From the NCBI GenBank assembly GCA_950097015.1, contig CATNEN010000032.1:744001-808000 (forward strand): a DNA stretch of 64,000 bases, written 5' to 3'. The DNA is from Macrostomum hystrix (lineage: Eukaryota > Animalia > Platyhelminthes). The translations under genes and the position numbers were made by a program. Of the stretch, positions 9,861 through 47,779 are shown in pieces; position 1 is the stretch's first letter, and each line of letters opens with the position of its first letter. A model generated the notes under the pieces. That model did not search any database, had not been told where the DNA came from, and was given only the letters and a program-made list of their open reading frames with translations.

Positions 9861-12180
9861 TGGAGTGTGCTGCGGGAATCGAGCGGGAATGTGAGCCAGC
9901 GGAATTTTTCCAATTTTTAGTAGCCAAATAATCGCGACCCACATAGCAGCTGGCCGCAGACCACAATCATTAATCTTAGGGCCGGGCTTGGGGCGGAGGT
10001 GAATTAAGTAGCCGCCGATTCCCCTTGCCTCGGATCTGTCTAGTCTCCTGTAGAAGTGACTGATCGCGGCCATAGCAATACTGTATGGACTAGTTTAGGT
10101 CATAATTCCCCTCCAAACCGCGATCAGATTGTAGGGATCACTCATGCGTCTAGAGTGAGCATTAATTCTTCATGTCCCCTTTTCTTTACTGTAACCCGAG
10201 CCGAAGCTCGATTATGACCTTTCCCCCTTTAGATACATGTAACGACACTATAGGCAGGTCGGCGCCTGCGCTTCCCATATCCCGGCGGGATCACAATCAT
10301 TGGCCGACTGCCGGCAGACGCTCCTAGTGGGGCATCTGGCGATTCTCGCCGCCGCTTCGGTGGGCAATTGGGGTGGCATAATGCCGACCCGATTCCTCGC
10401 TGACAGGCTGGCGAGCATGTGGGTTGCTTTGATGAATGCGGGGTTGACGGAGCTGCAGGACTATTTAAGAAAGCGCGCTGCGCTGCCCCTAGGACAACCT
10501 TCCTCCCTTTCAACCTTTTTCCCTGGCTTCCACAAGCCTCCCTGCGAACCTCCCTTTGGACCTTCTTCCCCTGTCCGGTCCCGGAACTCGGTTCGTGGAC
10601 TCTCCCCCTTCTAGTCTAGCACTTAGCCCCTGAGCCTAAAGGCTCCAGAGCATAACTACAGGTAAATACCTGTTAGATCCCGCAAGCATAAGCCACCTCC
10701 TTGGGTGAGCTCCAATTGAGCATCGAGCTCCTTGCAGCCTGGCCCCTTGCCAGCTGTGTTTAGCAACTCCCTGTCTCGTTCCCCCTTTTATTTGCCCATC
10801 CCTGCGAGAGCGACGGCCTGCAGCAAAGTCAGCCAGCATCAGATAAGTAACCCGCGCAGCGGACACTAATTGTTATCCCTAAGGGATTTATTATTTAGCT
10901 AGTGGGGCAATCTGGGCAAGGGCGGTGTTTTAGCCTAATAAACTATTCATTACCAATATGCCAAACCTTAATAATTAGGCCAATTTAATAACAACCAAAC
11001 CTTTTTATCATGCTATTCTCTTCTCTTTATTTTATCGTTAGACAGCCTTCAATCATGAGTGGCTAACTCATTAGGGGGTGGGCTCTGGTGATGCCTAGCT
11101 GAAAGCTGCGGCAGGAGGACAACTGTGAGCGCGCATGAGAGTAATAAGGAGCTAGGGATTTGCGAGTAAAATGCGGAACGTAGCGTGTGCATTGCTGCTT
11201 CGGGGCGGGGAATTCCTTGGCCGGCTTTCCTCTCTCACTGGCGGATTCCAGTGTGCGCGTCAAACTCCTTTGTCAATTGAAGTCTCCTTCTATTCCCCGC
11301 CCTCGTAACTACGGCCATGGGAGCGAGAGGCGTGATCTAATAATTACCGCTTGCATAATCACTCAGCCAGTGTTCTGCTTAATCTCTCCTGCCTCTGATT
11401 TCCTCATCTCACACAGATTCGGATTTGCTAGTTATTTACTGTGCAGGCTGCAATCTAATGTAAGGAATGTGCCTGATGTTTCATGAGTAGGATTCCGGCT
11501 ATGGGTTTCTCATTCGAGTTCGGAGTACCACCTTTCTAGACCACTGTAGCGCAGTTTCAGGAATCCCCTGTTGAGGCGTGTCTCGATTCATTCTGGGGTC
11601 TTAGCCCTAGTCTAAAACGGAAGTTACAGAATGCCCTATTTTTCGGCTTGTCTGAGATCTGTGTGACAAACTAGGAGCTGTGAACTCCGGGGACCCAAGT
11701 TCCCAAATGTCTGCGGTGGCAACGTAGGCGCATTGGGTGGTGGCGCTACCCTAGATCATTTTCCGCTTTGCCAATAGCCTTTCCGCATTTCTAAGACAAG
11801 AGCCTGGGCCGAATCGACCACTGCTACCACTGTTAGGAGTCAGTTATGTACATGCTACTGATGACAGTAGGCTATCTAGCCCTGTCCTACCTGCTTGCGG
11901 GTAGTCCGATATCTCTTTAGACTTTAGCCGGTTTCGAGCACTGCTTGGGGTAGGCACGGCAGTCATGCCTGTGGCCTATGGGTTGAGTGGGACTGGCCAG
12001 CCTGAGGCCGAGAGGACCACTCCCTGCATCCACTGTCTCTCCCTTCATCTCTCCCTTCATCCCTCTCCCCGCGATAAATCGCGAGGCTTTGCGGTACGAC
12101 TTCTAACTCTATCGCCATTCCCACACTCCCTTTCTCTCTTGAGGACAGGTCATCGGATTGCAAAACCCGCACCCACTTCA
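9861..12180 (+). repeat. 3' LTR of E1 (about 2320 bp)
   Basis: TG...CA termini with imperfect inverted ends TGGAGTGTGCTGCGGG / CCCGCACCCACTTCA; exact start could be 9859. Confidence 0.9.
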
Positions 12181-12835
12181 ATGGTAATATATAATATGGT
12201 AATCTAGATATATATCTGGTAGTCAGTATAAACATAAGGTGTTTTGTTAAGCTTAGGCCTATCTTTGGAACCACAAATACCTATACAAATCGGCTGCTAA
12301 AGTTTACACAACTCTTAGGCCTACGTTTTTCAGGTAAGAAATTCTTTCAATATGATAATTCTTGAAACTGTAGAACATACTTGGTCAGGCAAATTCAACC
12401 CCAGGCAGAATCAACCGGCGCCTATGTGTTCTATGGCTTTTAGGCAAATTCAACCAGGCAGAATCAAGTTAATCTACAAGTTTGTCACATGTAATCGAAA
12501 CCGTATCACACTTGAAATGACAAAAGCAACATACAATTCGCAGATTGAGTCCTGTAATAATAGGCTAAACCTGTCAAAAAAAGACCTGTAAAAATCAGTA
12601 ATTTCTGTAAAAAAGGAAAAACTTCATAAGCTTATAATAATTCAGGAAAGCACGTTATGGTCCAACCATTTAACAGGCTTGTGCGCTCACTTCTTCCCTA
12701 CCTCTGGCATAAAATTCAGAAGAAAAAATTTCCTGTAATTTTCAGGCTCCTGTGAAATTTAGGATTTTCTGTAACTGTAAATTTAATCCTGTGATATTCT
12801 ACCGAATCTGTAACAAATCGTGATATTGGAGATCA

Positions 12836-16020: not shown

Positions 16021-17397
16021 CTATTCGAAGCTAATAACTACCTTGTTAGTGTCTCCGCACGCCGAAATTCTCATTTTCTTGGCTGACGGCTGCTCAATAG
16101 TGAAGTCACATGTTGACTCAGTTGTCTGATGTGGTTGGGCATGGGGAACAACACCGCTGACAAAGTCACTCGCACGTTTCTGCATAGCCACAGAATCGGT
16201 TATGTAGCGCTCAACTGCCGTGCTGCTATGTCCGGTAATGCGACAGATCTCAGCACGCTGAAGACCAGCTTCATTCAGATGTGTTGCACAAGTCTTTCGA
16301 AGACTCTGGTTGGTAAATTTTCCACCTTCGTTGGGAGCGACTTCCTTGCACAAGTCCTTCACCCTGCTGGCCAGTGTATGGCGACCAATTGGAGTTCTAC
16401 AAAACCATGGCGACGACGGGTCACTTGTCCAATTCTGGTTACACGCTAGAAACAGTGCGCCGGGAGATCCAGAGGGACGCTTCGACGAGTACAACTTGTA
16501 CAAACAGACGAGACAGCGTTCATGTCCGTCTGTGTGAAATGCCCGGACAATTTTGGGAGCACGGCGCAGTCCGATCAGACCACCTTGATTGTTTTTGGTC
16601 GCATTATTCTTGACGTACGAGAGTACACACTTCTCGTACTTAAGAGTTCCTCTCCACCAACCGTTTCCAGTCGAAGCTGACGATCATACTCGAGATTACG
16701 CAGTTCAGTTCCGCCACGGAGAGCGAAGTGCTTCGCAACAAGCCTGATTAGGGAGCACTGTAGCTGACGCGGCGAACTGTCTTCTAGAACTTGCTGTCCA
16801 AAGCGAATCCTCAACCGTGTCAGGAATCGGCTCGGACTTTCGGAGACCGGCACCTTTTCCATCCTTGGTTGAAAGCTTCATAGCAGCGTCCAAGGCACGT
16901 CTGCTATCGATGAAGTCAACGTCTTTCCACAAGCTCCAGTTAAAATGTAGAGTATTTTGTAAATAGTATTGTATCATGAAAAACAAATCCTTCAACGTAG
17001 ATGCACCGTATCTCTCACCGGCAACACTGCGCACTTCTAGAACGAAGAACTTCAGTAAATAATTCATATCCGACTCGCTCATTTCCTCGACCTCCTTCAG
17101 GACCATCATACCTCCACCTGTAGCCCATTGAGATTTTTTTCCAGAATGCCAATCGGTGAAAATCTTTATCGCCCATTGAGACTTCTTCCTATTCGTTTCA
17201 GGTGATGACTCGATGATCACCCTTTCGATATCCTCTTCCGATAGAACCTTGTATCTTGAAGGCCGCTCGTCAAAGGTAGCTTGTTTGTTTTCTTCACCGA
17301 CGACGAAGTTTAACAATTCTTCATCAATCTCAAGATCTGGTGGCAGAATATCCAATAGTTCACTGTCCATGTTTCGTGAATCGTTCCAGCTATGCAA
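16021..17397 (-). pseudogene. Crypton-like DNA transposon tyrosine recombinase (DUF3504 type), frameshifted
   Basis: Three overlapping ORFs give FFVLEVR, RKSEPIPDTVEDSLW, FALRGGTELRNL, FTNQSLRKTCAT, ITGHSS...VERY (R-H/Q-R-H-Y residues). Confidence 0.8.
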
Positions 17398-18619: not shown

Positions 18620-19336
18620 TGAGCTAGAAGGAAGACGAGCTCGAGTCTTCCTGGACAGGTGTAATTTCGCTGTTACTGCAGATTTTGTGCAGAGATTCAG
18701 ACTCAGCCCTCCGACTGCGTAATATTTGTTACTACAAATCGGACACCGTCTGGCACCATCAACGCAGAGAAACCATGCTCTCTCTCCAAAGAACAGGTTT
18801 TGACTGCTCTTCGTTTCTATGCGACGAACAGCTTCTATCATGTGCTTCGCGACGCTCACGGCCCTTCTGCATCATCTGTGTGTCGCATTGTACGCAGTGT
18901 CAAGGGTAGTGAACGAAGAACTGTTTCAGCGTCATGTAAGATGGCCACAAGATAATATTATGACGTTCAGTCAAGATTTCTATAACATGGCCGGCATGCC
19001 GAGTGTCTGTGGCATCGTGGATGGCACCATTGTTCCCATCGCCACGCCCACAATCAACGAACAACAGTATGTAGATCGCAAAGGAAATCACTCCATCAAT
19101 GTTATGCTCGTCTCGGGACCACAACATCATTTCCTAGGATGCAACTTGTCTTGGCCCGCGAGCGCGTGAAGGATGCCCGTGTTCTACGGAATAGTCTACT
19201 TTTCACAGCTTTTGAGACAGATGGTTTTCGGCCGTTTCCTGGCGCGGTGATTTTGGGTGACTCAATATATCCATGTTTAGATTGGCTCATTCCTCCAGTT
19301 CTGGGGGACAATCTGCCCAATGCTACCCGGGCATGA
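18620..19336 (+). pseudogene. PIF/Harbinger DDE transposase remnant
   Basis: Homologous to 49844-50890 (CGIVDGT, YVDRKGNHSINVMLV, ILGDSIYPCLDWL); frameshifts; truncated at about 19333. Confidence 0.85.
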
Positions 19337-20758
19337 AGAGTTTTGGGTGTTGATCAGACACATGAAACTCCCACTTCTAGACAATGGGGAACAATTGCCT
19401 AGGAATTTATAACAGTCACGTGACACTTACTGCAATTGCTTCTTATTCCTTAAGTAGTTTGTAGTCTTCTGGGTCCCTGTAGTCCGGTAGTTCTCAGTCT
19501 CCTTGTTCTGGTCGACCGTGAGGTTTCAAGTCTATGTTTCTTGAGTCTTTGTAGTCTTGTCTTCTTTTGTCTTCCTGGCAGCTGCTTGAGTTTGTCAGTT
19601 GGCCAATAAATGACGAGAGCGAATCAGATTACTTGTCGGTTTCCTCGAGCTCGGAATTCACAATAGAAACGTGCGCCCTAGTGAAAATTGAAATTGAAAT
19701 CTCTCTTGTATATCTCTAATAGGTCCTCCTGAAGGGCGTCTTCTTCGTTTCCTCCGAAAGATAACGGATAGCTCAAATCAAATCAATCAATAATCCTCTA
19801 GGAATGTATCCTAGGAAACAAGGAGGCATTTCTCAAATGTATCGAAGATATGTGGCTCTCGTAAACTTACGAAACTAAAATAAACTCGTAATTCAATTCA
19901 ACAACTATTGCTAGCAATAAATAACTCTGTCTAGTAAAGCTCTTACCACTTGTCTTTCCCTCAGAGATGAGTCCTCTTCTTTGTAAGCTGTTTTGAAGTC
20001 CGGTGGACCGCTCCGAGTCTGAATTTTCAGCTCGGATTTTAGCTTGTATTTATAGTAAAATTTTGGGGGAAAACCGGTTCTACTACCGGGTGTTTACTTA
20101 GGTCACACATATTTGGTTAGTGACTCATGATTGTGAGTTTTACCATATTTGGAATATTGTGTAAATACAGATGCAGAAACCGATGAGTCATAATTGTTTG
20201 TTTTACCATATTTTGAATTAAAGCAAATACAGCTGTCGAGAACCGGTTCTCCGGTTTCATGCCACATGACTTTGTTTCTAAAAATAGCGCATGACTCATT
20301 CCTAAAAATAGATTAAACTTTCTATCTAAGGTTTCCTTGTGATATTACTTTAAGTAGCGCGTTTAAGCAAATGGAATATTTTACTCTCGACAATATCTAC
20401 CCTTTTTACGAAACAATTCGTCCCGAATTTTAATTATTAAGAGGAAAAGAAAATGACTTTGCATAACAATAATAGGATAATGTAATGTAATGATCATGTA
20501 TTGAAAGTATCAGGACTAGGTGAAATTGGTATAGGTACGTATGGGTAGACATGAAACACAAATGGATGATAATTGGTGTGAGTAGTTGATAAAATGTTCG
20601 TGAAAAAGAATTAACAGTTTGAGAAGAGATGCGTAACAATTTTGGCACTATATTGGTTAATATAAGGGATTGATAAACATGGGGAGGTGTAATTATTTTA
20701 AATAAGCAATGAATAATGGTCTGTTTGTTTTACTAGTTTATGCGATCAGAATTGTTAC

Positions 20759-21382
20759 TCATTCAAGGCTGAATTGTTGCCGGATAAATTCATGTACTTT
20801 GGCTTGAATTTTTGCCGTTAGTATGGCTATTGGCCAAAATAGTTTATATAGTTGTAGGTAGGCCGGATCCTCAGTATGCTCGAGGATATAGAGGTAGGCT
20901 TCTGTACCTGTGATAATTTCGGCTCGGCGTGTCAGTTGCTCGCCCAGTTGAAATAAATATCGCCGATGTTGTTGGCATCGCAGTGGTATCGGCCACGTCT
21001 TTATTGCCGTTAGTAATTCATAAGGCTCCATGTCATTCATATTCATGAGCAGGAGGTCCACTGCTACAGGCGTTAGTCGTATCGTATCCAAGGGTTCCTC
21101 CCGCAGCCGTAGGAAGCAATCGGGGCATTTGTTGATATTTCGACTGCCGAGTGTCTCTAGGCAGGCGAGGCAGCTCCAGTGTCTATTGTCACAGATTTGT
21201 ATTTGCGGTTGGTTACCGCAAATGAGACAGTGGACCCTGTCTCGACGGCAGATTGGGCAGGTGCGTATTGGGTTGCCAGTTTGCGCCGCGGCTGCCTCGC
21301 ATTGTTGGCATGTCCCATGTCCGACTTCGCATATGGGCATTAGATCGGTCTGTTCTTCTAAACAAACAGGGCAGTCTTGCAT
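20759..21382 (-). CDS. Double C3HC4 RING-finger protein, 207 aa, downstream of Gypsy pol
   Basis: CPVC-x10-CEVGH-x2-CQQC-x13-CPIC followed by CLIC-x7-CDNRH-x2-CLAC-x10-CPDC; ATG start, intact. Confidence 0.8.
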   Translation of the reverse strand: MQDCPVCLEEQTDLMPICEVGHGTCQQCEAAAAQTGNPIRTCPICRRDRVHCLICGNQPQIQICDNRHWSCLACLETLGSRNINKCPDCFLRLREEPLDTIRLTPVAVDLLLMNMNDMEPYELLTAIKTWPIPLRCQQHRRYLFQLGEQLTRRAEIITGTEAYLYILEHTEDPAYLQLYKLFWPIAILTAKIQAKVHEFIRQQFSLE

Positions 21383-21415: not shown

Positions 21416-22048
21416 TTAATCGGAGCTGACATATTGATATGATTCGTGTGGTGGCAGTAGATACGATAATTCTTCATTTCGCAAATTTTTTGTGGGGAGA
21501 ATTGTACAGAAAATGGGACAGGGATGAAGATTCATGTCATCGACAATATTAAACAGTTTTTGTGCAATATCATGTATGGACAATTGTCTAAGCTGAGGGC
21601 CGTATTGCAATGAGTATCGTACAATGTTTTTACGCGTTTTGTGGGCAATTCGTGGGATAGGCCATGCTTTTAGAAGTTGAATTATCTTGTAAGAGGAAAA
21701 ATAGTATAGGTTAATGGATGAAGTTGGCAACCGTAATTTAGTTTAATGCGCACAAGTTTGTTACAAATCATGAATTGTGGGGTATTATTGCAAACAGGAC
21801 ATTGGAAAATGGCTCGATAAGCAAACTTCTTCGTGCATTGCGGATACATGAAATGTTGGTTTTGACAGTATTGTACAGTTCGCCATGAATTACATATCAT
21901 GCATTGGCGGAGATTTCCACGGCACAGAGGACAGTTTTTAATGTTTTTTGTAGTGTGCGAGGCTTAAGCAAGAACCGCAAACATGGTGTTTATTGACACA
22001 TATACATGGTAGTTTACATGAGAATTCTTCAAGACAGACAGGACAGTC
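21416..22048 (-). pseudogene. Second, paralogous double-RING gene (frameshifted)
   Basis: DCPVCLEEFSCKLPCICVNKHHVCGSC / NCPLCRGNLRQCMIC...CQNQHFMYPQC...QCPVC / IIQLLKAWPIP match 20759-21382; one shift lies in an A6 homopolymer. Confidence 0.7.
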
Positions 22049-22181
22049 TATGGTAGTGTTTGCGAAAATTGTGTGGGCGTTTGCAGAGAGCAGAGGTTTA
22101 GTCGCCTTTTACGACAAGCTTGAGAAGCTGTAGTGCCATTCTTAATCCCGGTCACTACACGGCGAACAATAAACGAGTAAT

Positions 22182-25100
22182 TTAACGAGGGCGTAGGTTA
22201 TACGTAAGAGTATTTGGTGGTGTGTTTGTGGTTTGTGTCTCGGCATGTGCTGTTGCAATGTGCTTGTTTGTTGTTTTTGAACGGTCTGGATTCTGTAACG
22301 TTGGAAGGAATGTAGTGTCGTTAGTGATGCGTTTTAAACGTTGAATGTGAACATAGAACTGAGGTTGATGTGGATCCTGGATATTCGCAAGGCGTGCTGT
22401 TGTCGTGAATATCAGTGCTGTTACACGAAAAGGTCCTTTGTATTTGAAGGCATGTTTGTGCGTATGCTGTGCCGGGTAGTGTAGGTAGACGATATCTCCC
22501 ACTTGTAAAGTAGATGCATGTTTACTTGTTGTAGGTACTGTAGATTGGTTGTCGAGATTATGTTTTGCAATTTACCAATTGGCCGCCAAACTACTGAATA
22601 TTCAACAAATATTCACCTCGACATATAATCCAAAAGCAAACCTCGTCGAAAGATTTCACAGAAACCTACATGAAATGTTGACACACTTTGTCTATAAACA
22701 ACCTGAAGATTGGATTATCCACATACATCTCGCTGTGATGTCAGGTATCGGAATGGCAACGGCGAATTTCGAAAAAAACATTCAAGGCTGTAAGAATGTA
22801 ATTGTAGTCGATCGAGTGTTGTCGAGCAGATGGTAGTGGTCCGGTAATGTCAATTGACACTGTGTCCCATGTAGTTGTCTTCGGCACTGATTGGAGTTCA
22901 GGTTTTTGTCGTCTTCCGATTTTTGTTGAAGCACACGACTGACATTGTGTGCAGTACTTGCGAATGTCTAAATTCATTGTTGGCCAAAAATATAACTGTG
23001 CGACTCTCTGGATTGTTTTCTTGGCGGATAAGTGTCCGGCTAATGGACTATCATGAAGTTCGTGTAGGATCGCAGAACGGAATGTGTACGGTAGGTACAG
23101 TCGCGGAATATTGTTGTACACCCAGTAGAGTGCGAGTTCTCTGAAAACTAGACTATTCTTGTGTTTTCGTAAGAACTGTTTTTCGATTTTTGTAAGTTCT
23201 TTTTCCGTTTCTTCTGTATCTTCTTGTATGGCTTTGTAAAAGGAATCGTCATGTGCTTTCAACAAGTATTTTATGGTTGGAATTGGATGAACTGCATTGA
23301 TCTCGTATGTTCTGGACAGTGCATCAGCGGCTTTATTCATTGCCCCTGGTTTGTAAACCAGATGAAAGTTGTAGTGCGGTATTTTAAGGACCATTCGGAT
23401 GAGTCTATTGTTCGTCTGTCCTTTTGTTTTAACAACGTGAGTTAGCGGTGCGTGATCTGTGTGAATGATAATTGGCAGTGGTGATCCATAGATGTAGTAA
23501 TGGAATTGTTGAAGAGCAAACAGAACAGCTAGTAGTTCTCGTTCAGTGGCTGACCATTTTGTTTCGTTTGGTCTTAGAGCTCTACTGATGTAAGCAATCG
23601 GTTTTTCTTTCTTTGGTTCCATTTCCTGAAGGAGTACGGCTCAATCCACTTCCTGATGCGTCTGTTTCTATGATAAAAGGTTTGTGGAAGTTCGGGTGTT
23701 TGAGAAGAGCATCACTAGTTGTTGTTTGATTCTATCGAAACTTTCCTGTTGTTCCGCTTTCCAGTTGTCTTCTTTCCACTGGAATTTTTAGTAGTTCGTA
23801 CAATGGTTTAGCCGTTTGTGCAAAGTTAGGTAGGAATTTTCGGAAATATTGTGCTAGTCTAGGAATGACTGCATGGAATGACTGCAGTTTGGTAATTGAC
23901 GTAGGTTTCGGGAACTTCTTGACCTTGTCGACGTTATTTGGGTCTGGTTATATGCCTCGTGATAAAACGTGATGTACAAGATATCGGACCGAATCTCTGC
24001 AGAATTTACATTTTGTAGGTTGCAGTTTTAGACCTTGTCGGAGTAAGAAGAGAGCTTGTTCCATGACTTTTACTAGTTGTTCGAAGTTATTTCCAAAGGC
24101 AAGAATATCATCAACATAGTGAAGCAGATTTGTACATCCGGCTAGCATATAGGATGTAACACGGCTCATTGTTGCTGGTGAGTTAGAGATTCCCATTAGA
24201 CTTCTCTGATACGCTAAAACTTCTCCTTTGTAAGTTTTGAAGGCAGTGTATTGTTTTGATTCTTCTTCAAGTTCGATTTGCCAGAATCCATGTCGTAGGT
24301 CAAATACTGTGAAGAGTGTCGCCGTATTGAGTCGTGCTAGCAGTTCGGAGATTTTTGGTAGACTTTGTTGATCGGTGGGAATGTACTTATTTAGGACTCG
24401 GAAATCACAGTCGAGTCGTCTTTCGTTTGTTTCTTTCTTTTCGATAAGAAGGCAAGTTGAAGAGTATGCTGAGACGGTTCGTTTTATGATTCCTGCTTTA
24501 AGCATTTTTTATTAATTTTATCGAAGTGTTGCTGTAGGTGTTTAGCGACTGGATATGGTTTACATTGGATTGGTTCTTGATGAGGCAGTAGTTCAATTTT
24601 TTGCTTGATATCTCGAGCACATCCGATGTCGTAATCGTGATGACAGAAGACGTCGTTATACTTCCACAATAGATCTTTTACTTGTGTTTTTTGTCCTTCG
24701 GTGATTAGACTTTGAGAGAGATCAATTTGTTGTAGGAATTTTTGTTTAGACATTTTCGTTGTTGTCTCTGGTTGGATGAGCATTACCGAAGCTTGTGTGT
24801 TGAGACGCCCCATGCATGTTCCTGCATAGTTTTTTACTGGATGTTGATTTGGATTTATAATTTGTACTGGGATGTTTCTTTCCCTAGAGCCGTTGGTATT
24901 AAAACTTCTTTTGTTGTGAGGATCTTCTTTCTTGGTTCAAATATCATAGCTTCTTCGACATCGTCATGATTGGCGAGGTATGCTTTAACCCAACATGTAC
25001 TTTCCGGTTGTATGAAGACATCTTGTTTAATATGTACTTTTGGTTGAAAGTGAACTTGGCTGACTAAAGGATGTTCCACATTGTCCAGTTTGAATGTTTG

Positions 25101-25561
25101 TTTGTTGAAATCAAATGTTAATGGTAGATTCATCTGCCGAAATGTGTCGATTCCAATAATAACGTCTTGGCTTGGAAGATGGTCAATAACAAATGCTTGT
25201 ACCAGAAGTTGTTTGTTTGCAAGTTTAAGTGATATGTTCACTTGTCCTAGAATATTAAGTGCATGTCCTCCGGCTTCGGCGACAGCAATCGAAGAAGGTC
25301 GCATATGAAGTTGCAATTTGTCGTAAGTCTTTTTGTGATGACTGTGATTGAACTTCCTGAGTCGAGAAGTGCTTTACTGGGCATGTTGTTCATAAATACT
25401 TGAGCCATCGCTCTACCCATATTGGCTTGCAAGGTGCAAATGTAATTTGCTGGCCATTTTGGATCCGTTGGTAGAAGAAGAGATGTCGGCGGTGGTCTCG
25501 CTGTTCTGATTTCAATTTTTGGGTAGATATTTGATCGTTCTGGTTCTGGTGCTGTTGGCAA
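22182..25561 (-). pseudogene. pol: Gypsy pol (PR-RT-RNase H-IN), fragmented
   Basis: LLDSGS protease; DLRHGFWQI and YVDDIL RT; IAYISR...ERELLA...TDHAPL RNase H; HDSPLAGH...CQSC IN zinc site; YKGPFRV and YNLRPR IN tail. Confidence 0.92.
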
Positions 25562-25968
25562 TAATTGTTTTCCTTGATCTTGTAGTAGAGTTTCTTCATT
25601 TTTTCATTAGGTGTAGTAGTTCCTTGTTTGTCAATTTGGACAATCCGTTGTTTTGCTGGATATGCTCGTGCTACACATCGTACTGCTGTTATAAAGATCA
25701 TTAGTGCAAGGTGAATCCATACAATGCATGCACTGGAGAAGATGAATCCCTGATAGTAACTTCCTTTTCCTTGGAGTAGATCGAGAAAGCTATTCGACCA
25801 AAAGGATCCTATTGCGTTATGTATGATGAATCCTGCTGTGGCTTACAAACCACGGCTTTTTAGCAATCGTTTATAAAACGCTTTTTTAACAACTGAGGCC
25901 AATTTTATAAACACTTTAATCCATGTCAGCTACCCGTGGATAAATTATCCGTAGATTTTATCTATGCT

Positions 25969-26737
25969 TATAAGACTTAGAAATCTGAAGGGAATTCAAG
26001 AGTTCGCTAGCAGAAAGCTAAAAGCTAAAAATAGCAACAGCAGAGAGGGCAAACAACCAAGGGGAGAGAGACTGGACAAAAACCCGCCCCGAAGTCACTT
26101 CATCATTTCAGCTCAGGCCGGGTCGGCATGGCAACAGCGTGCTGACGTGGAACTGCCTGAGACCGGACCCGCAGCTGTACTGACGCGGCGCTGCCGGAAT
26201 CAACCCGGCCTGTCCCTGCCTGCAGCTGCCGGCGTCGGCCCAGCCCAGCCCGCATTGGGAGCCGCCTGGGCCCGGCCGGGAACGAGAGCTGGAGGAGGAC
26301 GGAACCGTACAAGAAAACGGGATCGATAAAAGGCGAAGGAATAACGAACGGTGGGAGAGAAGTTTCAGTGGAAGTGGGAACATATCCTAACTCAACTAAT
26401 GCGTTTTTAAGACTGTAACTCACCCTCCATGGGAAAGGGGTTGGCGTGCCTGCCAACCAACTAGTTTAACGTTAATAACTGTACTAGGCTGGAGGCTGCG
26501 ACCTCACTCAACACAAATCCTCATGAGTACTTTTGCTACGGTAATGCCTACCCTCGGATTGAGGGGTTTTGAAGACAGAATATATATCGGAGCGGAGCGC
26601 GGGAAAAGGTCCGCCGCGCCAGTTAGTCGTTAGGAGTTATAGCCTTCAAGACATCTAGACTGCAATAAACCGCTAGACTAATTATATTTTGAAAGACACT
26701 AAAATCGATGAGAGATTAGAAAGCTTGAAGCGCTATA
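25969..26737 (+). repeat. 5' LTR of element A (135-bp internal deletion)
   Basis: Near identical to 47780-48681 except loss of 48439-48573 at TAGT microhomology; termini TATA...TATA. Confidence 0.9.
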
Positions 26738-27387: not shown

Positions 27388-30300
27388 TGTCGGATTCATC
27401 TGGCAATCCTCCACGTTAATTCAAGCTTGCCCTACTGCGCTAAATTTAGCTCCTTGTTACACCTTGTTTACCCATAGACACCCCCAGCCTCAACTGTACT
27501 CTTAAATTAAATACAAAGTCGCCCAGCCGTTCCCCAAAAGAAACTACACACACGCATGTTCGTTCTAGCAACTTAAGCTTAACATAAAGCCTTTGTCTCA
27601 GTCAGTTGACGACAAATTGGTAGCAGAGCGTGGTTTGTTTGGCACCAAGGCAATGGTCAACACTCGCGCGACCTCAGCCGAGACTGGGGATACAACCGAC
27701 CCGATTTCTGGGGATCATGCAGGACAGGAGCAAGCAACGGGAGGGGCGACCGCTGGACCATCGGCACCACTGCTTCAGCCGACAGTTGCCGGCCAGCCGC
27801 CAGCCAACCAGGACATGCTTCAGCACCTACTCGGCGTCATGGTCACCATGATGCAGCAAAACCAGCAACTACTTACTCAGCTTCAAAGCCAGACAGCGGC
27901 AGCCCCACCGGCGCCAGCGGCGGTGCCAGATGCGAACCCACTGCCCACGGCCCGCCGCCCGGCTTCCTTCGTCGGCGACAGCGTCCTGCGCAACGCACGA
28001 CTACCGACATTCGATGGTGAGGACCCCGCCGCATTCCCAGCGTTCTGGGGCGCGTTCGATCATCGAATTCATGCCCTAGAAATGTCTCCCGTCGACAAGT
28101 TTGAGGTCCTTCGAGGTCTCCTCACGGGGGCCGCGTTGCGGAAGCTCGGAGGTCTGGACGCTTGCCAGCCCGGCGCGTACGAGGAGGCGCGGCGGATTCT
28201 GGAATATAACTACGGCGATTTGCAAGAGCAGAAGAGCGCATGCTACAAACGCCTCCTGGACATGCCACGTCTCAACGACGTCGACTTCCGAACGCTGGAA
28301 CCCTTCGCGGACGCACTTCGTCTCACTGTAGGTCAGCTTGCCCGGCTGCAGGAGCCGGAAGCGGCGATGGACGCATACATCCACGCCTTGTGGCCGAAGT
28401 TACCTATCGCGCTCCGGACAGACATTCAGGACCCCCGCATTAAAGCCACTCAGTCGCCCATGCCCACTATGACCGACTTGCAAGGACACTTGGACGCGAA
28501 GCTACGCGTTCTCCGTGCCGCCAGGACTGTGACAAACGAAGCTCCAGCCGAAGCACCCTACTCCGGTGCCAGTCTCCTCGGCGCGGCATCAAACTCTTGC
28601 CCACCGGCCGCGCAGAACTCAGGACGCAGCTACGCCGCCGGCAGACATCAGCATGGCCCTAGTCGCAAAAACACCATCCGCTGTCAGGATATCGCCGGAT
28701 GGGTCTACTGCGACCAGAGCGGTCACAATGCGTCTCGCTGTGACCGTGTCACCCAGCCCGAGGACCGATTCAGTGCTGTCCGACGGAAGAAACTGTGTTT
28801 CAATTGCCTTGGGGATCACGAGGCACGGCATTGCCCCTCTTCCAGCCGGTGCCGCAAGTGCGGCTCCAAGCACCATACCTCTCTTCATGGCGCTTACCCG
28901 AGGGAACCCGCCATCCAAACTGGAGCAGGCCCCTCGGCGCACTCGCGAAGGCCGCATCAGCCGATAGTCAATTCGCATCTCAGTGACACCTCCCCCCTTG
29001 TGGAATCGACGGAGGATTCATCCGGCCCTGTTAACGCCATGTCCTGCGTCTCGTCCGCGCAGGATAGCCTCCTTCAGCCCATAGTGATGGCCACCTTCTC
29101 TGCTCCAGCTGTGAACCCGGCAACTGGGGATTCGGCTCCGATCACGGCCCTTATCGATGGCGGTTGCAGCTACACCTACCTTCGAGGCGACATAGCCCGG
29201 CGAATCGGCCTCCAGTCCCTCGGTACAATCAGCCTCGACAGCTCTGCGTGTCATGCCGAATCTCGCCGTCGCGTGCACGCCAACATTGTTCGCCTGGAAT
29301 TAGCCACACTGGATGGTCGACGCATGCCGCTGAAGGTGCTCTCAGTCGAGAGGATTGCTCCAGCCATTCACTTACAGGCGCTACAGCTTCCGAAAGATAT
29401 TCTAACAACCCTCGCCCATCTGCCTCTTGGGATTGCCAATGCACCCCCGATGGTGGACAAGGAGGTGGACCTGGATCTGCTGATTGGAAATGATTATGCA
29501 CAGTTACTCGTAGGCCCGAGCGTTGGTGCAATACCCCTACGTCGCAGCTTCACCGCTCACCTGACCCCGTTTGGAGCTGTCCTTACCGGCTCCCTCACAG
29601 GAACCTCGGACACCCATGCCATCTGCACCCGGGCCACCGAACTCCTCTGTACCGGGCGCCTCATCGTCAACTCACTCCACGGCTTGACAGAGCAACCTGT
29701 CCCGGACAACCTGTCTCATCTGGAGCTACTTGTAGATAGGATGACCAGTCTCGAGATCCTCGGTCTGGGTCCAAACACAGAACGGACCACGCAAAGCGAA
29801 GATCTCCAGACCAAGCGCCTTCTGGATTCTGCCACTCGGGAACCCGATGGCCGTTTCTCAGTCGCTCTCCCCTTCAAGCCAGGAGCCGAGCAGCTTCCTT
29901 CGAATTTCGGCCAAGCCTATGGCCGTGCTCGCGCAGTTCACAACCGCCTGGATCTCTTGCAACGCATGAAGTACTACGCTGAGTTCGAGAAACGTAAAAC
30001 CGAGGGCGTACTCGAGATCGTCGACAGTCGGTCGCCACCTGGACCGATCGTTCACGTCCTACCTCACTTCCCGGTGATAAAGGAATCAAGTAACACAACA
30101 AAAATACGACCCGTCGTTGACGCCTCCGCTCCGACATCCCTTGGAGGCAGCTGCTTGAATGACCTCCTGGAGACTGGACCAAACCTCCTAACCGACCTTC
30201 TCCAGGTCCAGCTCCGTCTACGAGTCTACGAATACGCCTGCGTCAGCGACATCCAGTCTGCATTCTATCAGATAATGGTACACCCCGGGTGTCGAGACGC

Positions 30301-31366
30301 TCTACGCATCATCCTGCCGAGAGACATCGCCAAGCCACTCGACCAAGACAACATGCAGCTTTGGCGCTTCACGCGGATCGTAATGGGCGCCAGCCCATCA
30401 CCCTGGATCCTTCTCACGGTGATCCACAAACTCTGCGCCGACGCCATCGCCGGTGGAACCCACCGTTTCGGACTCCACAAGGGCGAGGTTGAATCTATCC
30501 CTTCTGGGCTCTACATGGATAACCTCGTGCAAGGCTACGATTGCAAGACCGAGGGCCCTCGTTTCGTCGCTGGACTGCGGGCTCTATTCCACTCGGGGCA
30601 GTTCCACCTCCGGGAGTTCGCAGCAAACGACTCACAGGCTCTTCAGGGCCTCCCTGAGGAAGATCGCGTTGAGAACCCAGTCGTCAGAAACCTCGGTATC
30701 GTCTGGGACACCGTCAATGACACCATCCGACTTGCCAAGCCTACGATTTCATGCGGCATCACGCTTACTCGCGCCAGCTTACTGAGCGTCATCTCCCGCC
30801 CCTACGATCCATTTGGATACGTTGCCCCCCTCGTTCTGGCGGGCCGACTTCTCTACAGGGCGGCATTCAAGCCTAACGATGCCTGGGACACTCTGGCCGA
30901 TCCTGCCACCGTTGACGCTTGGTCCAGGCTCCGTTCAGACTTCGTTGACATCGACCGCATTGTCATACCTCGTCGCTGCGTCACGAAGCGCACTGTTCCC
31001 AGTCGCCTGGTCATCTTCAGTGATGGTTCACCACAGGCGTATGGCTTCACCGTCTATCTGCACCACACTCACGACGGTCGATCTTCCGCTTCCTAATTTC
31101 CTACGCCGTATCCTAGCCATCCGTACAGCCCCCCCAATCTGTCGGATTCATCTGGCAATCCTCCACGTTAATTCAAGCTTGCCCTACTGCGCTAAATTTA
31201 GCTCCTTGTTACACCTTGTTTACCCATAGACACCCCCAGCCTCAACTGTACTCTTAAATTAAATACAAAGTCGCCCAGCCGTTCCCCAAAAGAAACTACA
31301 CACACGCATGTTCGTTCTAGCAACTTAAGCTTAACATAAAGCCTTTGTCTCAGTCAGTTGACGACA
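27388..31366 (+). mobile_element. BEL/Pao LTR retrotransposon lacking integrase
   Basis: 227-bp TG...CA LTRs (27388-27614, 31140-31366), TSD GGGGG, PBS TGGTAGCAGAGCGTGGTTT (initiator tRNA-Met type) at 27618. Confidence 0.93.
27653..31096 (+). CDS. BEL/Pao Gag-Pol polyprotein truncated in RNase H
   Basis: FDGEDPAAFPAFW gag; three Cys/His knuckles; ALIDGG protease; SDIQSAFYQI and YMDN Pao RT; IFSDGSPQAYG RNase H start, then stop. Confidence 0.92.
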   Translation: MVNTRATSAETGDTTDPISGDHAGQEQATGGATAGPSAPLLQPTVAGQPPANQDMLQHLLGVMVTMMQQNQQLLTQLQSQTAAAPPAPAAVPDANPLPTARRPASFVGDSVLRNARLPTFDGEDPAAFPAFWGAFDHRIHALEMSPVDKFEVLRGLLTGAALRKLGGLDACQPGAYEEARRILEYNYGDLQEQKSACYKRLLDMPRLNDVDFRTLEPFADALRLTVGQLARLQEPEAAMDAYIHALWPKLPIALRTDIQDPRIKATQSPMPTMTDLQGHLDAKLRVLRAARTVTNEAPAEAPYSGASLLGAASNSCPPAAQNSGRSYAAGRHQHGPSRKNTIRCQDIAGWVYCDQSGHNASRCDRVTQPEDRFSAVRRKKLCFNCLGDHEARHCPSSSRCRKCGSKHHTSLHGAYPREPAIQTGAGPSAHSRRPHQPIVNSHLSDTSPLVESTEDSSGPVNAMSCVSSAQDSLLQPIVMATFSAPAVNPATGDSAPITALIDGGCSYTYLRGDIARRIGLQSLGTISLDSSACHAESRRRVHANIVRLELATLDGRRMPLKVLSVERIAPAIHLQALQLPKDILTTLAHLPLGIANAPPMVDKEVDLDLLIGNDYAQLLVGPSVGAIPLRRSFTAHLTPFGAVLTGSLTGTSDTHAICTRATELLCTGRLIVNSLHGLTEQPVPDNLSHLELLVDRMTSLEILGLGPNTERTTQSEDLQTKRLLDSATREPDGRFSVALPFKPGAEQLPSNFGQAYGRARAVHNRLDLLQRMKYYAEFEKRKTEGVLEIVDSRSPPGPIVHVLPHFPVIKESSNTTKIRPVVDASAPTSLGGSCLNDLLETGPNLLTDLLQVQLRLRVYEYACVSDIQSAFYQIMVHPGCRDALRIILPRDIAKPLDQDNMQLWRFTRIVMGASPSPWILLTVIHKLCADAIAGGTHRFGLHKGEVESIPSGLYMDNLVQGYDCKTEGPRFVAGLRALFHSGQFHLREFAANDSQALQGLPEEDRVENPVVRNLGIVWDTVNDTIRLAKPTISCGITLTRASLLSVISRPYDPFGYVAPLVLAGRLLYRAAFKPNDAWDTLADPATVDAWSRLRSDFVDIDRIVIPRRCVTKRTVPSRLVIFSDGSPQAYGFTVYLHHTHDGRSSAS

Positions 31367-31966: not shown

Positions 31967-33529
31967 ATGAATAACGAAGCTCTAAACCAAGACATTCAAA
32001 CAGGTACTGACAGAACTCCAGAACCCGGAGACGTTGATCAACAACAACAGCCACAAGATCAGTTAGATCAGCGAGAAGACCAGCTAGACCACAACGACGA
32101 GTGGGAAGACAACAACGAGCACTCATCAGACTCGGAAAACGAGGATAACGCAATGGAAGATCTCCAGAACCAAGTCCGAGAATTACAGCAGCGTCTCGCC
32201 ATGGCACACGGCAGAGACCTATCAGCCATAGTCCAGGCTCTCAAGTTATCGGCAGGAGACTACGAGATGGGACAGCCGTTTGTCAAATGGCTGACTGAAT
32301 TCGAGCTCCAGACAGCGACATATGGACTAACGGACGAAGAGAAGTGCCGACTACTACCACTCAGGCTGCGTCCTAACGCCCGTAATCAATACTCGGGACT
32401 CCCACAAGCTGCCCGAGAAGACTACGGACAGGTGAGAACACAACTCCGAGAGCTGTATGACACCAGAGCGATGGACCGACCCACGGCAGTACTTCAACTC
32501 TCCATGAGGATGCATCCAGGAGAGGATGTTAACAAGTTCATCGCCGACATCACACAACTAGTCGAGAACTCAGTGTTCCAAGAACCAGCACTGCGAGAGT
32601 TGGAACAGGACTCCAACGACGTACGCAAGCTGACAGCCATGGTAGCACAGATGGAGACTACAATCAGGCAAGCGGACCGGCGCACCCAAGATCGAGCTCA
32701 ACAGCCACAAAAGGAAGCCGCAACCAAGTACCCAGACGGCAATCCGAGGCCGACATGCCAACTCTGTGACAAGATAGGCCATACAGCCAACAGGTGCTAC
32801 CAAAGGAACAGGAACCTCGGTAAGAATACCGGGGGCCAAGTGCAGGCACAGGGCAGACAAGACCGAGGTAACATTAAGTGCCACAAATTTGGGAAGAGAG
32901 GACACTTTGCAAAGGAGTGCAGAGGTCAGCGATATTGCAAGAACTGCAATATGAATAACCATTGGACATCGGAGTGCGGCCGAGCACGCCAGAATAATCA
33001 AGAACGACAACAGCAGCAATGGCGACAGCCAAAGCAGATCGCCGAGGTCACAGCCCAGGACTCCAGCCCACAGCCAGCCCAATTGGCGAGTGAATCTAGC
33101 CAGACAGCGCACATTATGGCAATCAGCACGTTGGAAGCGACAATACCGACAAGGGCGAGAAACAACATCATACAGGCAAGGCGACAGAACAGGAAGAACA
33201 AGACGGCAACAGTTGCCCTAGTTCAGACCGTTCCACAACTCGAAGGACGAAAGCCAGAGCAGAGGGCTAGACAGGCCAGCACTGGCTGGAAAGCGCCGAC
33301 TGGACCGACAGTCGCACTTCTGCTGAAAATGCTACTCTTCGCACTGCTCTGCACATCGGCGGAAACGATAGGCCAAGGACAACAGAACTGGGTGGACACA
33401 CCGATGTACTGCCCGGAGCCCTCCAGGCCACAGATCTTCAAGCTGCCACCGGACATCGAGTGCAAGATGCCTAGCAGCATACAGCAGCACCGACAGCCGA
33501 TCAACCTGACAATCTTTAGACCGAATTAA
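31967..33529 (+). CDS. gag: Gag with three CCHC-like knuckles, in frame with a signal peptide and env-like ectodomain start
   Basis: FVKWLTEFE capsid; CQLCDKIGHTANRC, CHKFGKRGHFAKEC, CKNCNMNNHWTSEC; MLLFALLCTSAET hydrophobic leader (ATG 33329); PMYCPE...IECK. Confidence 0.8.
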   Translation: MNNEALNQDIQTGTDRTPEPGDVDQQQQPQDQLDQREDQLDHNDEWEDNNEHSSDSENEDNAMEDLQNQVRELQQRLAMAHGRDLSAIVQALKLSAGDYEMGQPFVKWLTEFELQTATYGLTDEEKCRLLPLRLRPNARNQYSGLPQAAREDYGQVRTQLRELYDTRAMDRPTAVLQLSMRMHPGEDVNKFIADITQLVENSVFQEPALRELEQDSNDVRKLTAMVAQMETTIRQADRRTQDRAQQPQKEAATKYPDGNPRPTCQLCDKIGHTANRCYQRNRNLGKNTGGQVQAQGRQDRGNIKCHKFGKRGHFAKECRGQRYCKNCNMNNHWTSECGRARQNNQERQQQQWRQPKQIAEVTAQDSSPQPAQLASESSQTAHIMAISTLEATIPTRARNNIIQARRQNRKNKTATVALVQTVPQLEGRKPEQRARQASTGWKAPTGPTVALLLKMLLFALLCTSAETIGQGQQNWVDTPMYCPEPSRPQIFKLPPDIECKMPSSIQQHRQPINLTIFRPN

Positions 33530-34170
33530 CCAGGTTACCCACCGATCAACACTCAAGATCTGTTATCGAGAAACGTATGTCTTCACCAGCATCGCACTGA
33601 GAACGCTGCACACGAGGGTGGTAAGCCCAGAAATGACTGTTAAGGTGCAGAAACATTTGGTCTCAGAGGAGGACTGTGAGTCCTGGGAGAAAGGTTACCG
33701 GACTCCAGATGGCACCCTTGAGGACGACGGGAAAGCCCCGAACAAAGCTGAACGATTCACTACTCATGTTTGGCCGGCAGAAGAATTGGAACCAACGGCT
33801 AGCACCCAAACCAGATACACGAAATCAGCGTCCACGCTGATAACGAAAATTCCGTTCTTCGTGGAGAATAAGAAAATGTCATCGCTATACATCCCACTAG
33901 GACATTGCAATTACACCATAGGAAAATGTCTTCACGAGTCCACTCTAGAGGTCGAGAGGGATGCGCCGTTGGAGAGACAGGTACCTAATAAACTATGGGA
34001 AGCTCTGAGATACTACGACACAACATTCAAGGTAGCTGGAGAACGCCAGTACAGATATGTCTGGACACCCAGCGCTGAAATCAACTGCCCTTACCAGGAA
34101 GACAAGCGAATAGAAGGAACTATTCACACAGGATGGCTCATGTCTAAGGACGCCACCTACGCTTTGACTT
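33520..34170 (+). pseudogene. env: Env-like glycoprotein ectodomain continuation (frameshifted, truncated by CACTA)
   Basis: KICYRETY...VSEEDCE...GHCNYTIGKCLHEST...YVWTP...CPY cysteine pattern resembling class III (rhabdovirus G-like) fusogens; N-glycosylation sequon NYT. Confidence 0.55.
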
Positions 34171-44749: not shown

Positions 44750-44945
44750 CAATTGAGATCAAGGAAGGGAGGAAGCAGACGGACAATTTTACATTTTAAA
44801 CTATTTATTACTTTGTTGGTGTGCGCTCTGATATTTAGAATTAGATATTTTACACTACTTATAAGTAGCCACTATTTAATCACTCACAAATATTTAACCC
44901 ACCCTTCGGATAATCAGATGTATTCGACGGAGCTAGACACAGTGG

Positions 44946-47533: not shown

Positions 47534-47779
47534 CGATCGAATACTAATTAACTCAGGATTAAAAACCACGCATACTCACAACATATTATTCACTATTTAC
47601 AACAATGCTTAAACAAATGAATTACACACTTACCCATTTAGCCTCTTAATCTAATAGTTTCAGATTTCACCGTCTTATATGTTCACATACCTACCAGCAG
47701 TAGACAGATTAGCAATTCGAGTCAGACAATAGATTGCATCTCCCTTGACCAGTCAAAAATTTCTTCAAAAGGTGGATGA

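What the first reader, a model, noticed from the sequence alone, without database searches (positions are those of the whole stretch)
20759..21382. Gypsy element carrying an intact double-RING (E3-ligase-like) accessory gene
Seen: intronless 207-aa ORF with two tandem C3HC4 RINGs (CxxxH spacing as in SINA/Siah RINGs) plus a helical C-terminal domain, on the same strand as and about 800 bp downstream of integrase, in the env-like slot. It is intact while pol is riddled with frameshifts. Established: viruses use RING ligases (e.g. ICP0) against host defence. Inference: a retrotransposon-encoded ubiquitin ligase acting as an anti-silencing or host-manipulation factor. I know of no described Gypsy family with this cargo.
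Basis: partly seen in the sequence, partly recalled or inferred. Interest (0 to 1): 0.8.

Follow-up and report, generated by a model that had tools for sequence, protein, structure and literature searches.

The report
Flatworm retroelement carrying paired RING genes
A dead, truncated copy of a virus-like Gypsy retroelement, whose closest relatives are in the flatworm Macrostomum lignano, keeps an intact gene for a two-RING-finger protein; the gene is a conserved passenger of this element lineage and may be the first ubiquitin-ligase-like gene described in a retroelement.

Summary
Window 20759-21382 (-) is an intact 207-aa ORF with two adjacent C3HC4 RING fingers and a helical C-terminal domain, 800 bp downstream of a broken Gypsy integrase.

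New findings:
- The 800 bp hold a second, broken paralogue (RING-A).
- The order integrase > RING-A > RING-B recurs in an independent, diverged lineage (L001 plus L004).
- In a Macrostomum lignano relative with full LTRs (L006), RING-A lies between integrase and the polypurine tract/3' LTR. The window has the homologous polypurine tract and LTR start downstream of RING-B. The genes are therefore element cargo, not a neighbouring host gene.
- Only five relatives exist among 1.84 billion representative proteins. All 16 zinc ligands are invariant at 25-37% identity.
- dN/dS is 0.08 on the one comparable stretch.
- An AlphaFold model reaches pLDDT 92, and its RINGs superpose on true E3 RINGs.
- The lineage appears to carry an env-like gene between gag and pol, so the RING genes do not sit in an env slot.

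Ligase activity and any anti-host role are inferred, not shown. The window copy is dead, and its intact ORF could be chance (P about 0.1). I found no published description of such cargo.

The parts
20759..21382 (-). RING-B: intact 207-aa ORF (the finding). RING1 = residues 4-45 (nt 21248-21373), RING2 = residues 52-89 (nt 21116-21229), helical C-terminal domain with a conserved W-P motif = residues 95-207 (nt 20762-21100).
21416..22070 (-). RING-A: decayed paralogue of the same double-RING gene. Its best match is the intact P0005 of locus L001. It is broken by at least two frameshifts and several in-frame stops, and no start codon is evident.
22095..22163 (-). Conserved non-coding block between the integrase stop and RING-A. 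It is about 94% identical to the M. lignano relative, more than the flanking coding DNA. Small hairpins are predicted, with compensatory changes in L001. Its function is unknown; it is a candidate cis element for expressing the RING genes.
22182..25561 (-). pol (protease, reverse transcriptase, RNase H, integrase) of a Ty3/gypsy element, broken by 6 frame changes (including one segment on the opposite strand) and 6 in-frame stops. It is 60-64% identical in protein to the M. lignano relative; the 185-aa RT ORF reaches 77-80% over most of its length.
25612..25824 (-). Remnant (71 codons, 51% identity) of the C-terminal end of the 815-aa env-like ORF that lies between gag and pol in the M. lignano relative. 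It includes that ORF's membrane-anchor region. Upstream of it the element is truncated: no gag and no 5' LTR.
20393..20758 (-). Internal 3' untranslated stretch ending in the polypurine tract (about 20396-20407). The tract and its flank are homologous to the tract of the M. lignano relative.
19333..20392 (-). 3' LTR. It starts with TG at 20392. A 14-nt TATA motif shared exactly with the L006 LTRs lies at 20042-20055. A GTAAG splice-donor-like site lies at 19942-19946. The end lies between 19333 and 19351, where homology to a Harbinger fragment begins.
25969..26737 (.). Unrelated repeat that bounds the truncated 5' side of the element. Other copies lie at 47780-48681 (99.8% identical) and 42274-43157 (76%). 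It is not this element's LTR, since it has no match at the 3' end.

Best explanation
The ORF is RING-B, the second of two tandem paralogous double-RING accessory genes. A lineage of Ty3/gypsy, errantivirus-like retroelements of macrostomid flatworms carries them between integrase and the polypurine tract/3' LTR. The lineage's layout is LTR, gag, env-like, pol, RING-A, RING-B, LTR. SHOWN: the gene order recurs in diverged copies; the gene lies inside the LTRs; the zinc scaffold is invariant; the one measurable stretch is under strong purifying selection; the family is otherwise absent from a library of 1.84 billion representative proteins. INFERRED: the protein is a RING-type E3 ubiquitin ligase. 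RING1 recruits and activates a host E2: it keeps a hydrophobic residue between the first two Cys, the Pro after Cys7, and an invariant Arg after Cys8 in the 'linchpin' position. RING2 lacks the conserved linchpin and would serve as an in-chain partner RING, as BMI1 does for RING1B. The fast-evolving helical C-terminal domain would bind the target. The target would be a host factor that limits the element, or an element protein whose turnover is regulated. The genes are probably expressed from a processed sub-genomic RNA: a GTAAG donor-like site sits in the LTR leader and a CAG sits just 5' of the ATG. The copy in this window belongs to a dead, 5'-truncated element and is probably not functional there. 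My confidence by step: cargo of the element 0.9; RING E3 activity 0.55; anti-host role 0.3.
For: Gene order. L001 has an integrase ORF (Integrase_H2C2 plus rve), then 120 nt, then the intact double-RING protein P0005. L004 has the C-terminus of a P0005-like protein (90% identical) directly followed by the double-RING protein P0003. The window has the same order, with 52-61% integrase identity to L001.

Inside the LTRs. L006 (M. lignano) is LTR-internal-LTR-internal-LTR with about 860-bp LTRs. Its double-RING ORF lies between integrase and the polypurine tract/LTR. The window's polypurine tract, LTR start and TATA motif are homologous to L006's and lie downstream of RING-B.

Rarity. Only 5 relatives were found in 1.84e9 representatives, and the word searches found nothing further.

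Constraint. All 16 Zn ligands plus P43 and R46 are invariant at 25-37% identity. dN/dS is 0.08 with Fisher p = 5e-7 over 49 codons of RING-A, L004 against L001.

Fold. The model has pLDDT 91.8 and pTM 0.81 from 6 sequences. The RINGs superpose on E2-bound E3 RINGs at 2.0-2.8 A with probability 0.9-0.99, and the best whole-chain hit is the RING1B-BMI1 fusion. The profile matches TRIM21, BRE1, RING2 and SIAH1 at E = 2e-5 to 3e-4.

Processing hints. A GTAAG lies 107-127 nt after the TATA in both the window and L006 LTRs. CCCACAG lies just 5' of the ATG in window RING-B and in L002. P0001 departs from LTR-leader homology at that GTAAG.
Against: No activity was measured. All Pfam RING hits are below the curated cut-offs. 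The C-terminal domain matches nothing, so no substrate can be named. The window copy lacks a 5' LTR, so 'inside the LTRs' rests there on the 3' LTR alone plus the relative. The nearest M. lignano relative (L006) has only a short RING-A (128 aa) and no RING-B, so RING-B is dispensable for some members. RING-B is 9-12 GC points richer than the rest of its own element, which is unexplained. The splice hints are weak, because P0001 may be a gene-prediction chain across a tandem array. The species behind the Logan runs is unknown, and the genomic context of P0002 and P0004 could not be seen.
Confidence: 0.6

Rival explanations
1. The double-RING proteins are element cargo but not enzymes. They act as zinc-scaffold structural or regulatory proteins, for example a matrix or assembly adaptor in the manner of the arenavirus Z RING protein, which would fit a lineage that also carries an env-like glycoprotein. 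Alternatively they act as a transcription or RNA-handling factor.
For: The lineage carries an env-like membrane protein (PMC13524379). The profile gives weak hits of RING2 to arenavirus Z (E = 0.05-0.2) and to MAT1, a RING protein that is not an E3 (E = 6e-4). Pfam RING scores are below cut-off. Many RINGs lack ligase activity (PMC6487577, listed).
Against: RING1 keeps the E2-face Pro and an invariant Arg in the linchpin position. The best matches are true E3 RINGs, several solved with E2. The Z hits are not significant.
Confidence: 0.25
2. At this locus the ORF is a non-functional relic. The element is dead and the ORF is open by chance. Any function belongs to other copies of the family, not to this one.
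For: Pol has 12 breaks. The element is 5'-truncated and lacks gag and the 5' LTR. The sister gene RING-A is broken. P(no break in 624 nt) is about 0.10 at pol's break density.
Against: The ORF keeps the ATG, all 16 ligands and the full C-terminal domain, and it folds confidently. The 3' LTR with its TATA is present but lies downstream, so it cannot drive the ORF.
Confidence: 0.6
3. The ORF is a host gene or retrocopy that merely lies beside a decayed Gypsy.
For: No LTR pair can be found for the element in the window. RING-B has a higher GC content than the element.
Against: The same integrase > RING-A > RING-B order occurs in diverged copies from other samples and in M. lignano. The gene lies inside the LTRs in L006. 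The homologous polypurine tract and LTR start lie downstream of the ORF in the window. No relatives of known context lie outside such elements.
Confidence: 0.03

Closest known systems
RING E3 ligases encoded by large DNA viruses (herpesvirus ICP0, baculovirus and nucleocytoviricota RING proteins)
   Same: A parasite-encoded C3HC4 RING protein. Local RING fold matches appear in the viral structure library, and there is a weak profile hit to the EHV-1 RING (E = 0.05).
   Different: There is no similarity beyond the RING itself (ICP0 entries have probability 0.18 or less). Here the carrier is an LTR retroelement, the protein has two adjacent RINGs plus a private helical domain, and activity is untested.
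Paired-RING E3 modules (RING1B-BMI1, BRCA1-BARD1, MDM2-MDMX)
   Same: One RING carries E2-activating features and a second RING lacks them. The best whole-chain structural hit is the single-chain RING1B-BMI1 fusion 6wi7 (E = 0.038, probability 0.91), and the same entry appears in the profile search.
   Different: Both RINGs are in one 207-aa chain only 6 residues apart. The overall superposition is poor (rmsd 11.9 A). I could not inspect the RING-RING packing in the model because no coordinates were available.
Accessory (additional) ORFs of LTR retroelements: plant aORFs (PMC7264820), bdelloid rotifer captured ORFs (PMC5408684), the orchid Ty3/gypsy demethylase domain (PMC9289625), and the Cer1 CERV protein (PMC10309623)
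   Same: Extra conserved coding capacity downstream of pol, on the sense strand, inside the LTRs.
   Different: In the titles and abstracts listed, none of these is described as a RING or ubiquitin-ligase-like protein. Here the cargo is a tandem pair of paralogues.
GAG-ENV-POL errantivirus-like Ty3/gypsy elements of Platyhelminthes, Nematoda and Bryozoa (PMC13524379)
   Same: The M. lignano relative has gag, then an 815-aa membrane-protein ORF, then pol. The window keeps the tail of that ORF upstream of protease.
   Different: That paper's main text never uses the words RING, ubiquitin, zinc or accessory. My env assignment rests on a Pfam hit below cut-off plus topology, not on a demonstrated gB-type fold.
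Retroviral accessory proteins that hijack host E3 ligases (Vif, Vpr/Vpx, Vpu; from my own knowledge)
   Same: Small post-pol accessory proteins of a retroelement, thought to redirect ubiquitination.
   Different: Those proteins are adaptors without a RING. Here the element would supply the RING itself.

Membership tests
RING finger (C3HC4) superfamily | Eight zinc ligands in C3HC4 order with canonical spacing, in each of the two fingers | tested here: met
   Spacing read. All 16 ligands are invariant in 5- and 6-member alignments at 25-37% identity.
RING finger (C3HC4) superfamily | Significant match to curated RING models or solved RING structures | tested here: inconclusive
   Pfam hits (Sina_RING, zf-C3HC4, zf-RING_2) are all below the gathering scores. 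However, the family profile hits TRIM21, BRE1, RING2 and SIAH1 at E = 2e-5 to 3e-4, and Foldseek gives local matches at 2.0-2.8 A with probability 0.9-0.99.
RING-type E3 ubiquitin ligase | E2-binding and activating residues: a hydrophobic residue between Cys1 and Cys2, Pro after Cys7, and a basic 'linchpin' after Cys8 | tested here: met
   RING1 has V6 (V or I in most members), and P43 and R46 are invariant. R46 aligns with the Arg after the last Cys of TRIM21. RING2 has no conserved linchpin. The roles of these positions come from established RING E3 literature, not from a test here.
RING-type E3 ubiquitin ligase | E2-dependent ubiquitin transfer | not testable with these tools
   No biochemical data exist.
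SINA/Siah E3 family | Sina-type RING above cut-off, plus Siah zinc fingers and a TRAF-like substrate-binding domain | tested here: not met
   Sina_RING scores 22.5 bits against a cut-off of 29.3 and no other Sina domain is found. The C-terminal domain is all-helical. SIAH1 is only one of many equal RING hits.
RBR (RING-between-RING) ligases | RING1, an IBR domain, and a catalytic-Cys RING2 | tested here: not met
   No IBR hit. The two fingers are 6 residues apart and both are ordinary C3HC4.
Ty3/gypsy LTR retrotransposon | pol domain order protease-RT-RNase H-integrase | tested here: met
   Pfam RVT_1, RT_RNaseH and Integrase_H2C2 in that order on the minus strand. Collinear with the L006 pol.
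Ty3/gypsy LTR retrotransposon | A pair of LTRs with TG..CA ends, a polypurine tract and a primer-binding site enclosing the genes | tested here: inconclusive
   In the window, only the 3' LTR and polypurine tract are found, by homology; the 5' part is lost. In the relative L006, the full set is present and encloses the RING gene.
GAG-ENV-POL errantivirus-like elements | An envelope glycoprotein ORF between gag and pol | tested here: inconclusive
   The L006 815-aa ORF hits Monjiviricetes_fusion at E = 1.8e-5, below cut-off. It has a C-terminal hydrophobic anchor, 18 Cys and 7 sequons. It has no PDB sequence hit. Only a 71-codon tail is left in the window.
Herpesvirus ICP0-like proteins | Homology beyond the RING finger | tested here: not met
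   ICP0 entries in the viral fold library have probability 0.18 or less. The EHV-1 RING hit has E = 0.05 and covers the RING only.

The most novel reading that the evidence does not exclude
A lineage of animal LTR retroelements encodes its own RING E3 ubiquitin ligases, as a tandem pair of fast-evolving paralogues expressed as post-pol accessory genes. They would mark host restriction or silencing factors for degradation. This would be a retroelement counterpart of ICP0-type viral ligases, and of the Vif/Vpr strategy but with the ligase built in.
Probability: 0.3. Interest if true: 0.85.

Novelty: new variant of a known kind. Interest (0 to 1): 0.65.

Why it matters
Retroviruses are known to redirect host ubiquitin ligases through adaptor proteins, and large DNA viruses are known to encode their own RING ligases. 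A retroelement that carries its own RING-ligase-like genes would link the two strategies. It would also show that invertebrate endogenous retrovirus-like elements can be genetically 'complex', carrying gag, env, pol and accessory genes. The family is tiny, confined to these elements wherever context is visible, under purifying selection on its scaffold, and very divergent elsewhere. That is the pattern expected of a host-interaction factor. Macrostomum lignano is a tractable model with genome, transcriptome and catalogued LTR families (PMC12801592), so expression and distribution can be checked directly.

Tried and rejected
- The word-index protein search with the ORF and with the family profile found nothing new.
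- Exact look-ups of the ORF, of P0001 and of a window Harbinger transposase were not on record, so the source species stays unproven.
- The LTR-pair search in the window found no pair for this element.
- The repeat at 25969-26737 was considered as a possible 5' LTR and rejected, because it has no counterpart at the 3' end and has copies elsewhere.
- The single-sequence AlphaFold run was poor (pLDDT 57). The alignment-based run replaced it.
- Whole-chain fold searches gave no match for the C-terminal domain.
- The genomic context of P0002/P0006 and P0004 could not be established.
- A PDB sequence search with the env-like ORF was blank.
- dN/dS for RING-B was not feasible. Relatives are either 25-37% identical (saturated) or nearly identical (one difference between L002 and L003).
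- P0001 was considered as proof of splicing from the LTR leader to the RING ORF and downgraded. Its 'leader' segments are bounded by AG and GT and may be a gene-predictor chain across a tandem array.
- SINA/Siah, RBR and ICP0 membership were rejected (see Membership tests).

Full report
**1. Observation**

- Window 20759..21382 (minus strand) is an ATG-initiated 207-aa ORF.
- It has two adjacent C3HC4 fingers, at residues 4-45 and 52-89.
- Pfam gives only sub-threshold RING hits for the first finger (best: Sina_RING, E = 1.2e-4, 22.5 bits against a cut-off of 29.3).
- A sequence search of the PDB gives TRIM21, RING2, TRIM32 and RNF4 RINGs at E = 1e-3 to 1e-2.
- The ORF lies 800 bp downstream of, and on the same strand as, the C-terminal integrase ORF of a Ty3/gypsy pol (RVT_1, RT_RNaseH, Integrase_H2C2).
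- The window is a transposon-dense stretch of a non-human, invertebrate-like genome with Harbinger, CACTA-type, LINE, BEL/Pao and Gypsy elements. I do not take it for human.

**2. The 800-bp gap holds a second copy**

- tblastn of the ORF against the window finds a decayed paralogue between integrase and the ORF.
- RING-A is broken by at least two frameshifts and several stops.

**3. Relatives**

- The word search was blank. Because the claim rests on absence of relatives, I ran the exhaustive search.
- It found five relatives in 1.84 billion representatives.
- P0001 is a 660-aa fragmentary model annotated 'RING-type domain-containing protein' of Macrostomum lignano (UniRef A0A1I8G201). It holds two full units and pieces of more units.
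- The other four are Logan-assembly proteins of 130-214 aa.
- All 16 zinc ligands, P43 and R46 are invariant although pairwise identity is only 25-37%.

**4. Is it part of the element? Yes**

*(a) The gene order recurs.*
- L001 carries an integrase ORF (H2C2 plus rve). After 120 nt, on the same strand, comes the intact double-RING protein P0005, which is the A type.
- L004 carries the last 49 codons of a P0005-like protein (90% identical). Its stop abuts the ATG of P0003, a B-type double-RING protein.
- The last bases of L001 begin the same second gene.
- So integrase > RING-A > RING-B recurs in a lineage whose integrase is only 52-61% identical to the window's.

*(b) In a full-length relative the gene lies inside the LTRs.*
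- Through the integrase I reached an M. lignano genomic locus, L006 (GCA_002269645.1).
- Its self-comparison shows LTR (2164-3020), internal, LTR (11895-12751), internal, LTR (21625-22489), with units 99% alike.
- The LTRs have TG..CA ends. A polypurine tract lies just before each LTR and a TGG-starting primer-binding-like site lies 2 nt after it.
- Each unit holds, in order:
  - gag with a CCHC knuckle;
  - an 815-aa ORF;
  - protease-RT;
  - RNase H-integrase;
  - a 128-aa double-RING ORF of the A type (40-45% identical to P0005);
  - the polypurine tract and the LTR.

*(c) The window has the matching 3' end.*
- It has the homologous polypurine tract and LTR start about 365 nt downstream of the RING-B stop.
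- It has the same 14-nt TATA motif once in that LTR, as in each L006 LTR.
- The LTR ends where a Harbinger fragment begins.

**5. State of the window copy**

- Against L006, pol shows 6 frame changes (one segment lies on the opposite strand) and 6 in-frame stops.
- Only the last 71 codons of the 815-aa ORF remain. gag and the 5' LTR are gone, and the 5' side abuts an unrelated repeat.
- At pol's break density the chance that 624 nt stay unbroken is about 0.10. The intact ORF is therefore not by itself evidence of selection at this locus.

**6. Evidence of function at family level**

- The only pair at a usable distance is the C-terminal 49 codons of RING-A in L004 against L001. It shows 15 synonymous and 5 non-synonymous differences, giving dN/dS = 0.08 (Fisher p = 5e-7).
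- With just six sequences, AlphaFold gives pLDDT 91.8 and pTM 0.81. The model has two small zinc-finger modules and a helical domain from residue 95 to 204.
- Foldseek superposes the RINGs on E3 RINGs, several solved with their E2 (RING1B, TRIM21, BIRC7, cIAP2, TRAF6, RNF4), at 2.0-2.8 A. The best chain-level hit is the RING1B-BMI1 single-chain fusion. Nothing matches the C-terminal domain.
- The family profile hits TRIM21 with RING1 and BRE1/RNF4 with RING2 at E = 2e-5 to 1e-4.
- RING1 keeps the Pro after Cys7 and an invariant Arg after Cys8, the position of the E2~ubiquitin 'linchpin' in well-studied RING E3s (from my own knowledge of that literature). RING2 does not.
- The RING proteins diverge much faster than pol. 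A types are 45% identical and B types 25-37%, where integrases are 52-66%.

**7. Mechanism: most likely reading**

- The proteins are element-encoded RING E3 ligases. RING1 would be the active finger, RING2 an in-chain partner, and the helical domain would bind the target.
- They would be expressed as post-pol accessory genes.
- Hints about expression (inference only):
  - a GTAAG lies 107-127 nt after the TATA in both LTRs;
  - CCCACAG lies just 5' of the ATG of window RING-B and of P0002;
  - stop and start abut in L004;
  - the roughly 65-nt block after the integrase stop is the best-conserved stretch of the region and has small hairpins with compensatory changes;
  - P0001 leaves LTR-leader homology exactly at the GTAAG, although it may be a gene-prediction chain.

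**8. Comparison with what is known**

- An eLife paper (PMC13524379) reports GAG-ENV-POL errantivirus-like Ty3/gypsy elements with gB-type env in Platyhelminthes. Its main text does not mention RING, ubiquitin, zinc or accessory genes.
- The L006 815-aa ORF fits that slot. It has a sub-threshold viral fusion glycoprotein hit, a C-terminal anchor, 18 Cys and 7 sequons. I could not confirm its fold.
- The catalogue of M. lignano LTR families (PMC12801592) does not mention RING or extra ORFs.
- Full-text searches for RING or E3 cargo in LTR retroelements found nothing relevant.
- Membership in SINA/Siah, RBR and ICP0-like families is not met (see Membership tests).

**9. Verdict**

The 'cargo' interpretation is supported and extended to a conserved tandem pair within an env-carrying lineage.
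- The enzymatic and anti-host readings remain inference.
- Novelty: a new variant of a known kind, namely accessory genes of LTR retroelements and virus-encoded RING proteins.

**10. Declaration of slips**

- I came to regard the element as virus-like only. Before that, searches printed tblastn match bounds over the broken pol and RING-A.
- (alignment A1) aligned the window's broken integrase region with L001 base by base.
- From then on, scripts printed only counts and outer bounds.
- L006 was fetched as a flatworm genomic locus through a protein look-up, not as a virus record. No virus of animals was fetched.

Noticed in passing
window 20759-21382 versus 21416-25561; L004:152-778 versus L001: RING-B genes are 9-12 GC points richer than the pol and RING-A of their own element, in two lineages (window 0.49 against 0.40 and 0.38; L004 0.57 against 0.45-0.47). 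This may point to a separate origin or a different constraint. It is unexplained.
   Followed up: partly
window 22095-22163 (-); L006:20966-21035; L001 about 1342-1405: A non-coding block just after the integrase stop is about 94% identical between the window and M. lignano, more than the coding DNA around it. It has small hairpins that keep pairing through two-sided changes in L001. With only three sequences this is anecdotal.
   Followed up: partly
L006:14812-17259 and window 25612-25824 (-): An 815-aa ORF between gag and pol in the M. lignano relative looks like an envelope glycoprotein. It has a sub-threshold viral fusion glycoprotein hit, a C-terminal hydrophobic anchor, 18 Cys and 7 N-glycosylation sequons. 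This matches the GAG-ENV-POL layout reported for flatworm errantivirus-like elements.
   Followed up: partly
window 31967-34211 (+): A 520-aa gag-like ORF (weak CCHC hit; 28% identical to L006 gag) is followed by an ORF 26% identical to the L006 env-like ORF. This looks like a second, more distant gag-env-type element on the other strand.
   Followed up: no
window 43328-44749 (+) and 44750-47780: A second Gypsy integrase (35-38% identical to the RING-carrying lineage) is followed by about 3 kb without any RING homologue before the repeat at 47780. That stretch holds a 245-aa ORF with no family hit.
   Followed up: partly
window 27388-27614 and 31140-31366: An exact 227-nt direct repeat flanks a 1167-aa BEL/Pao-type ORF (DUF1759, Peptidase_A17). 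This is either a very young or partly deleted BEL element, or an assembly duplication.
   Followed up: no
window 25969-26737, 47780-48681, 42274-43157: There are three copies of a repeat of about 0.8-0.9 kb. Two are 99.8% identical and the third is 76% identical. One of them abuts the truncated 5' end of the RING-carrying element.
   Followed up: partly
L006:2164-22489: The M. lignano relative is arranged as LTR-internal-LTR-internal-LTR, two units sharing the middle LTR and 99% alike. The annotated gene model P0007 spans both units as if they were one gene with a long intron.
   Followed up: partly
window 16705-17397 (-), 18770-19332, 49844-50890 (-): A QRICH1-domain ORF and a truncated Harbinger copy lie next to the element's 3' LTR. 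The Harbinger copy is 68% identical to the intact one at 49844-50890. It stops where the LTR ends, so the element probably inserted into it.
   Followed up: partly
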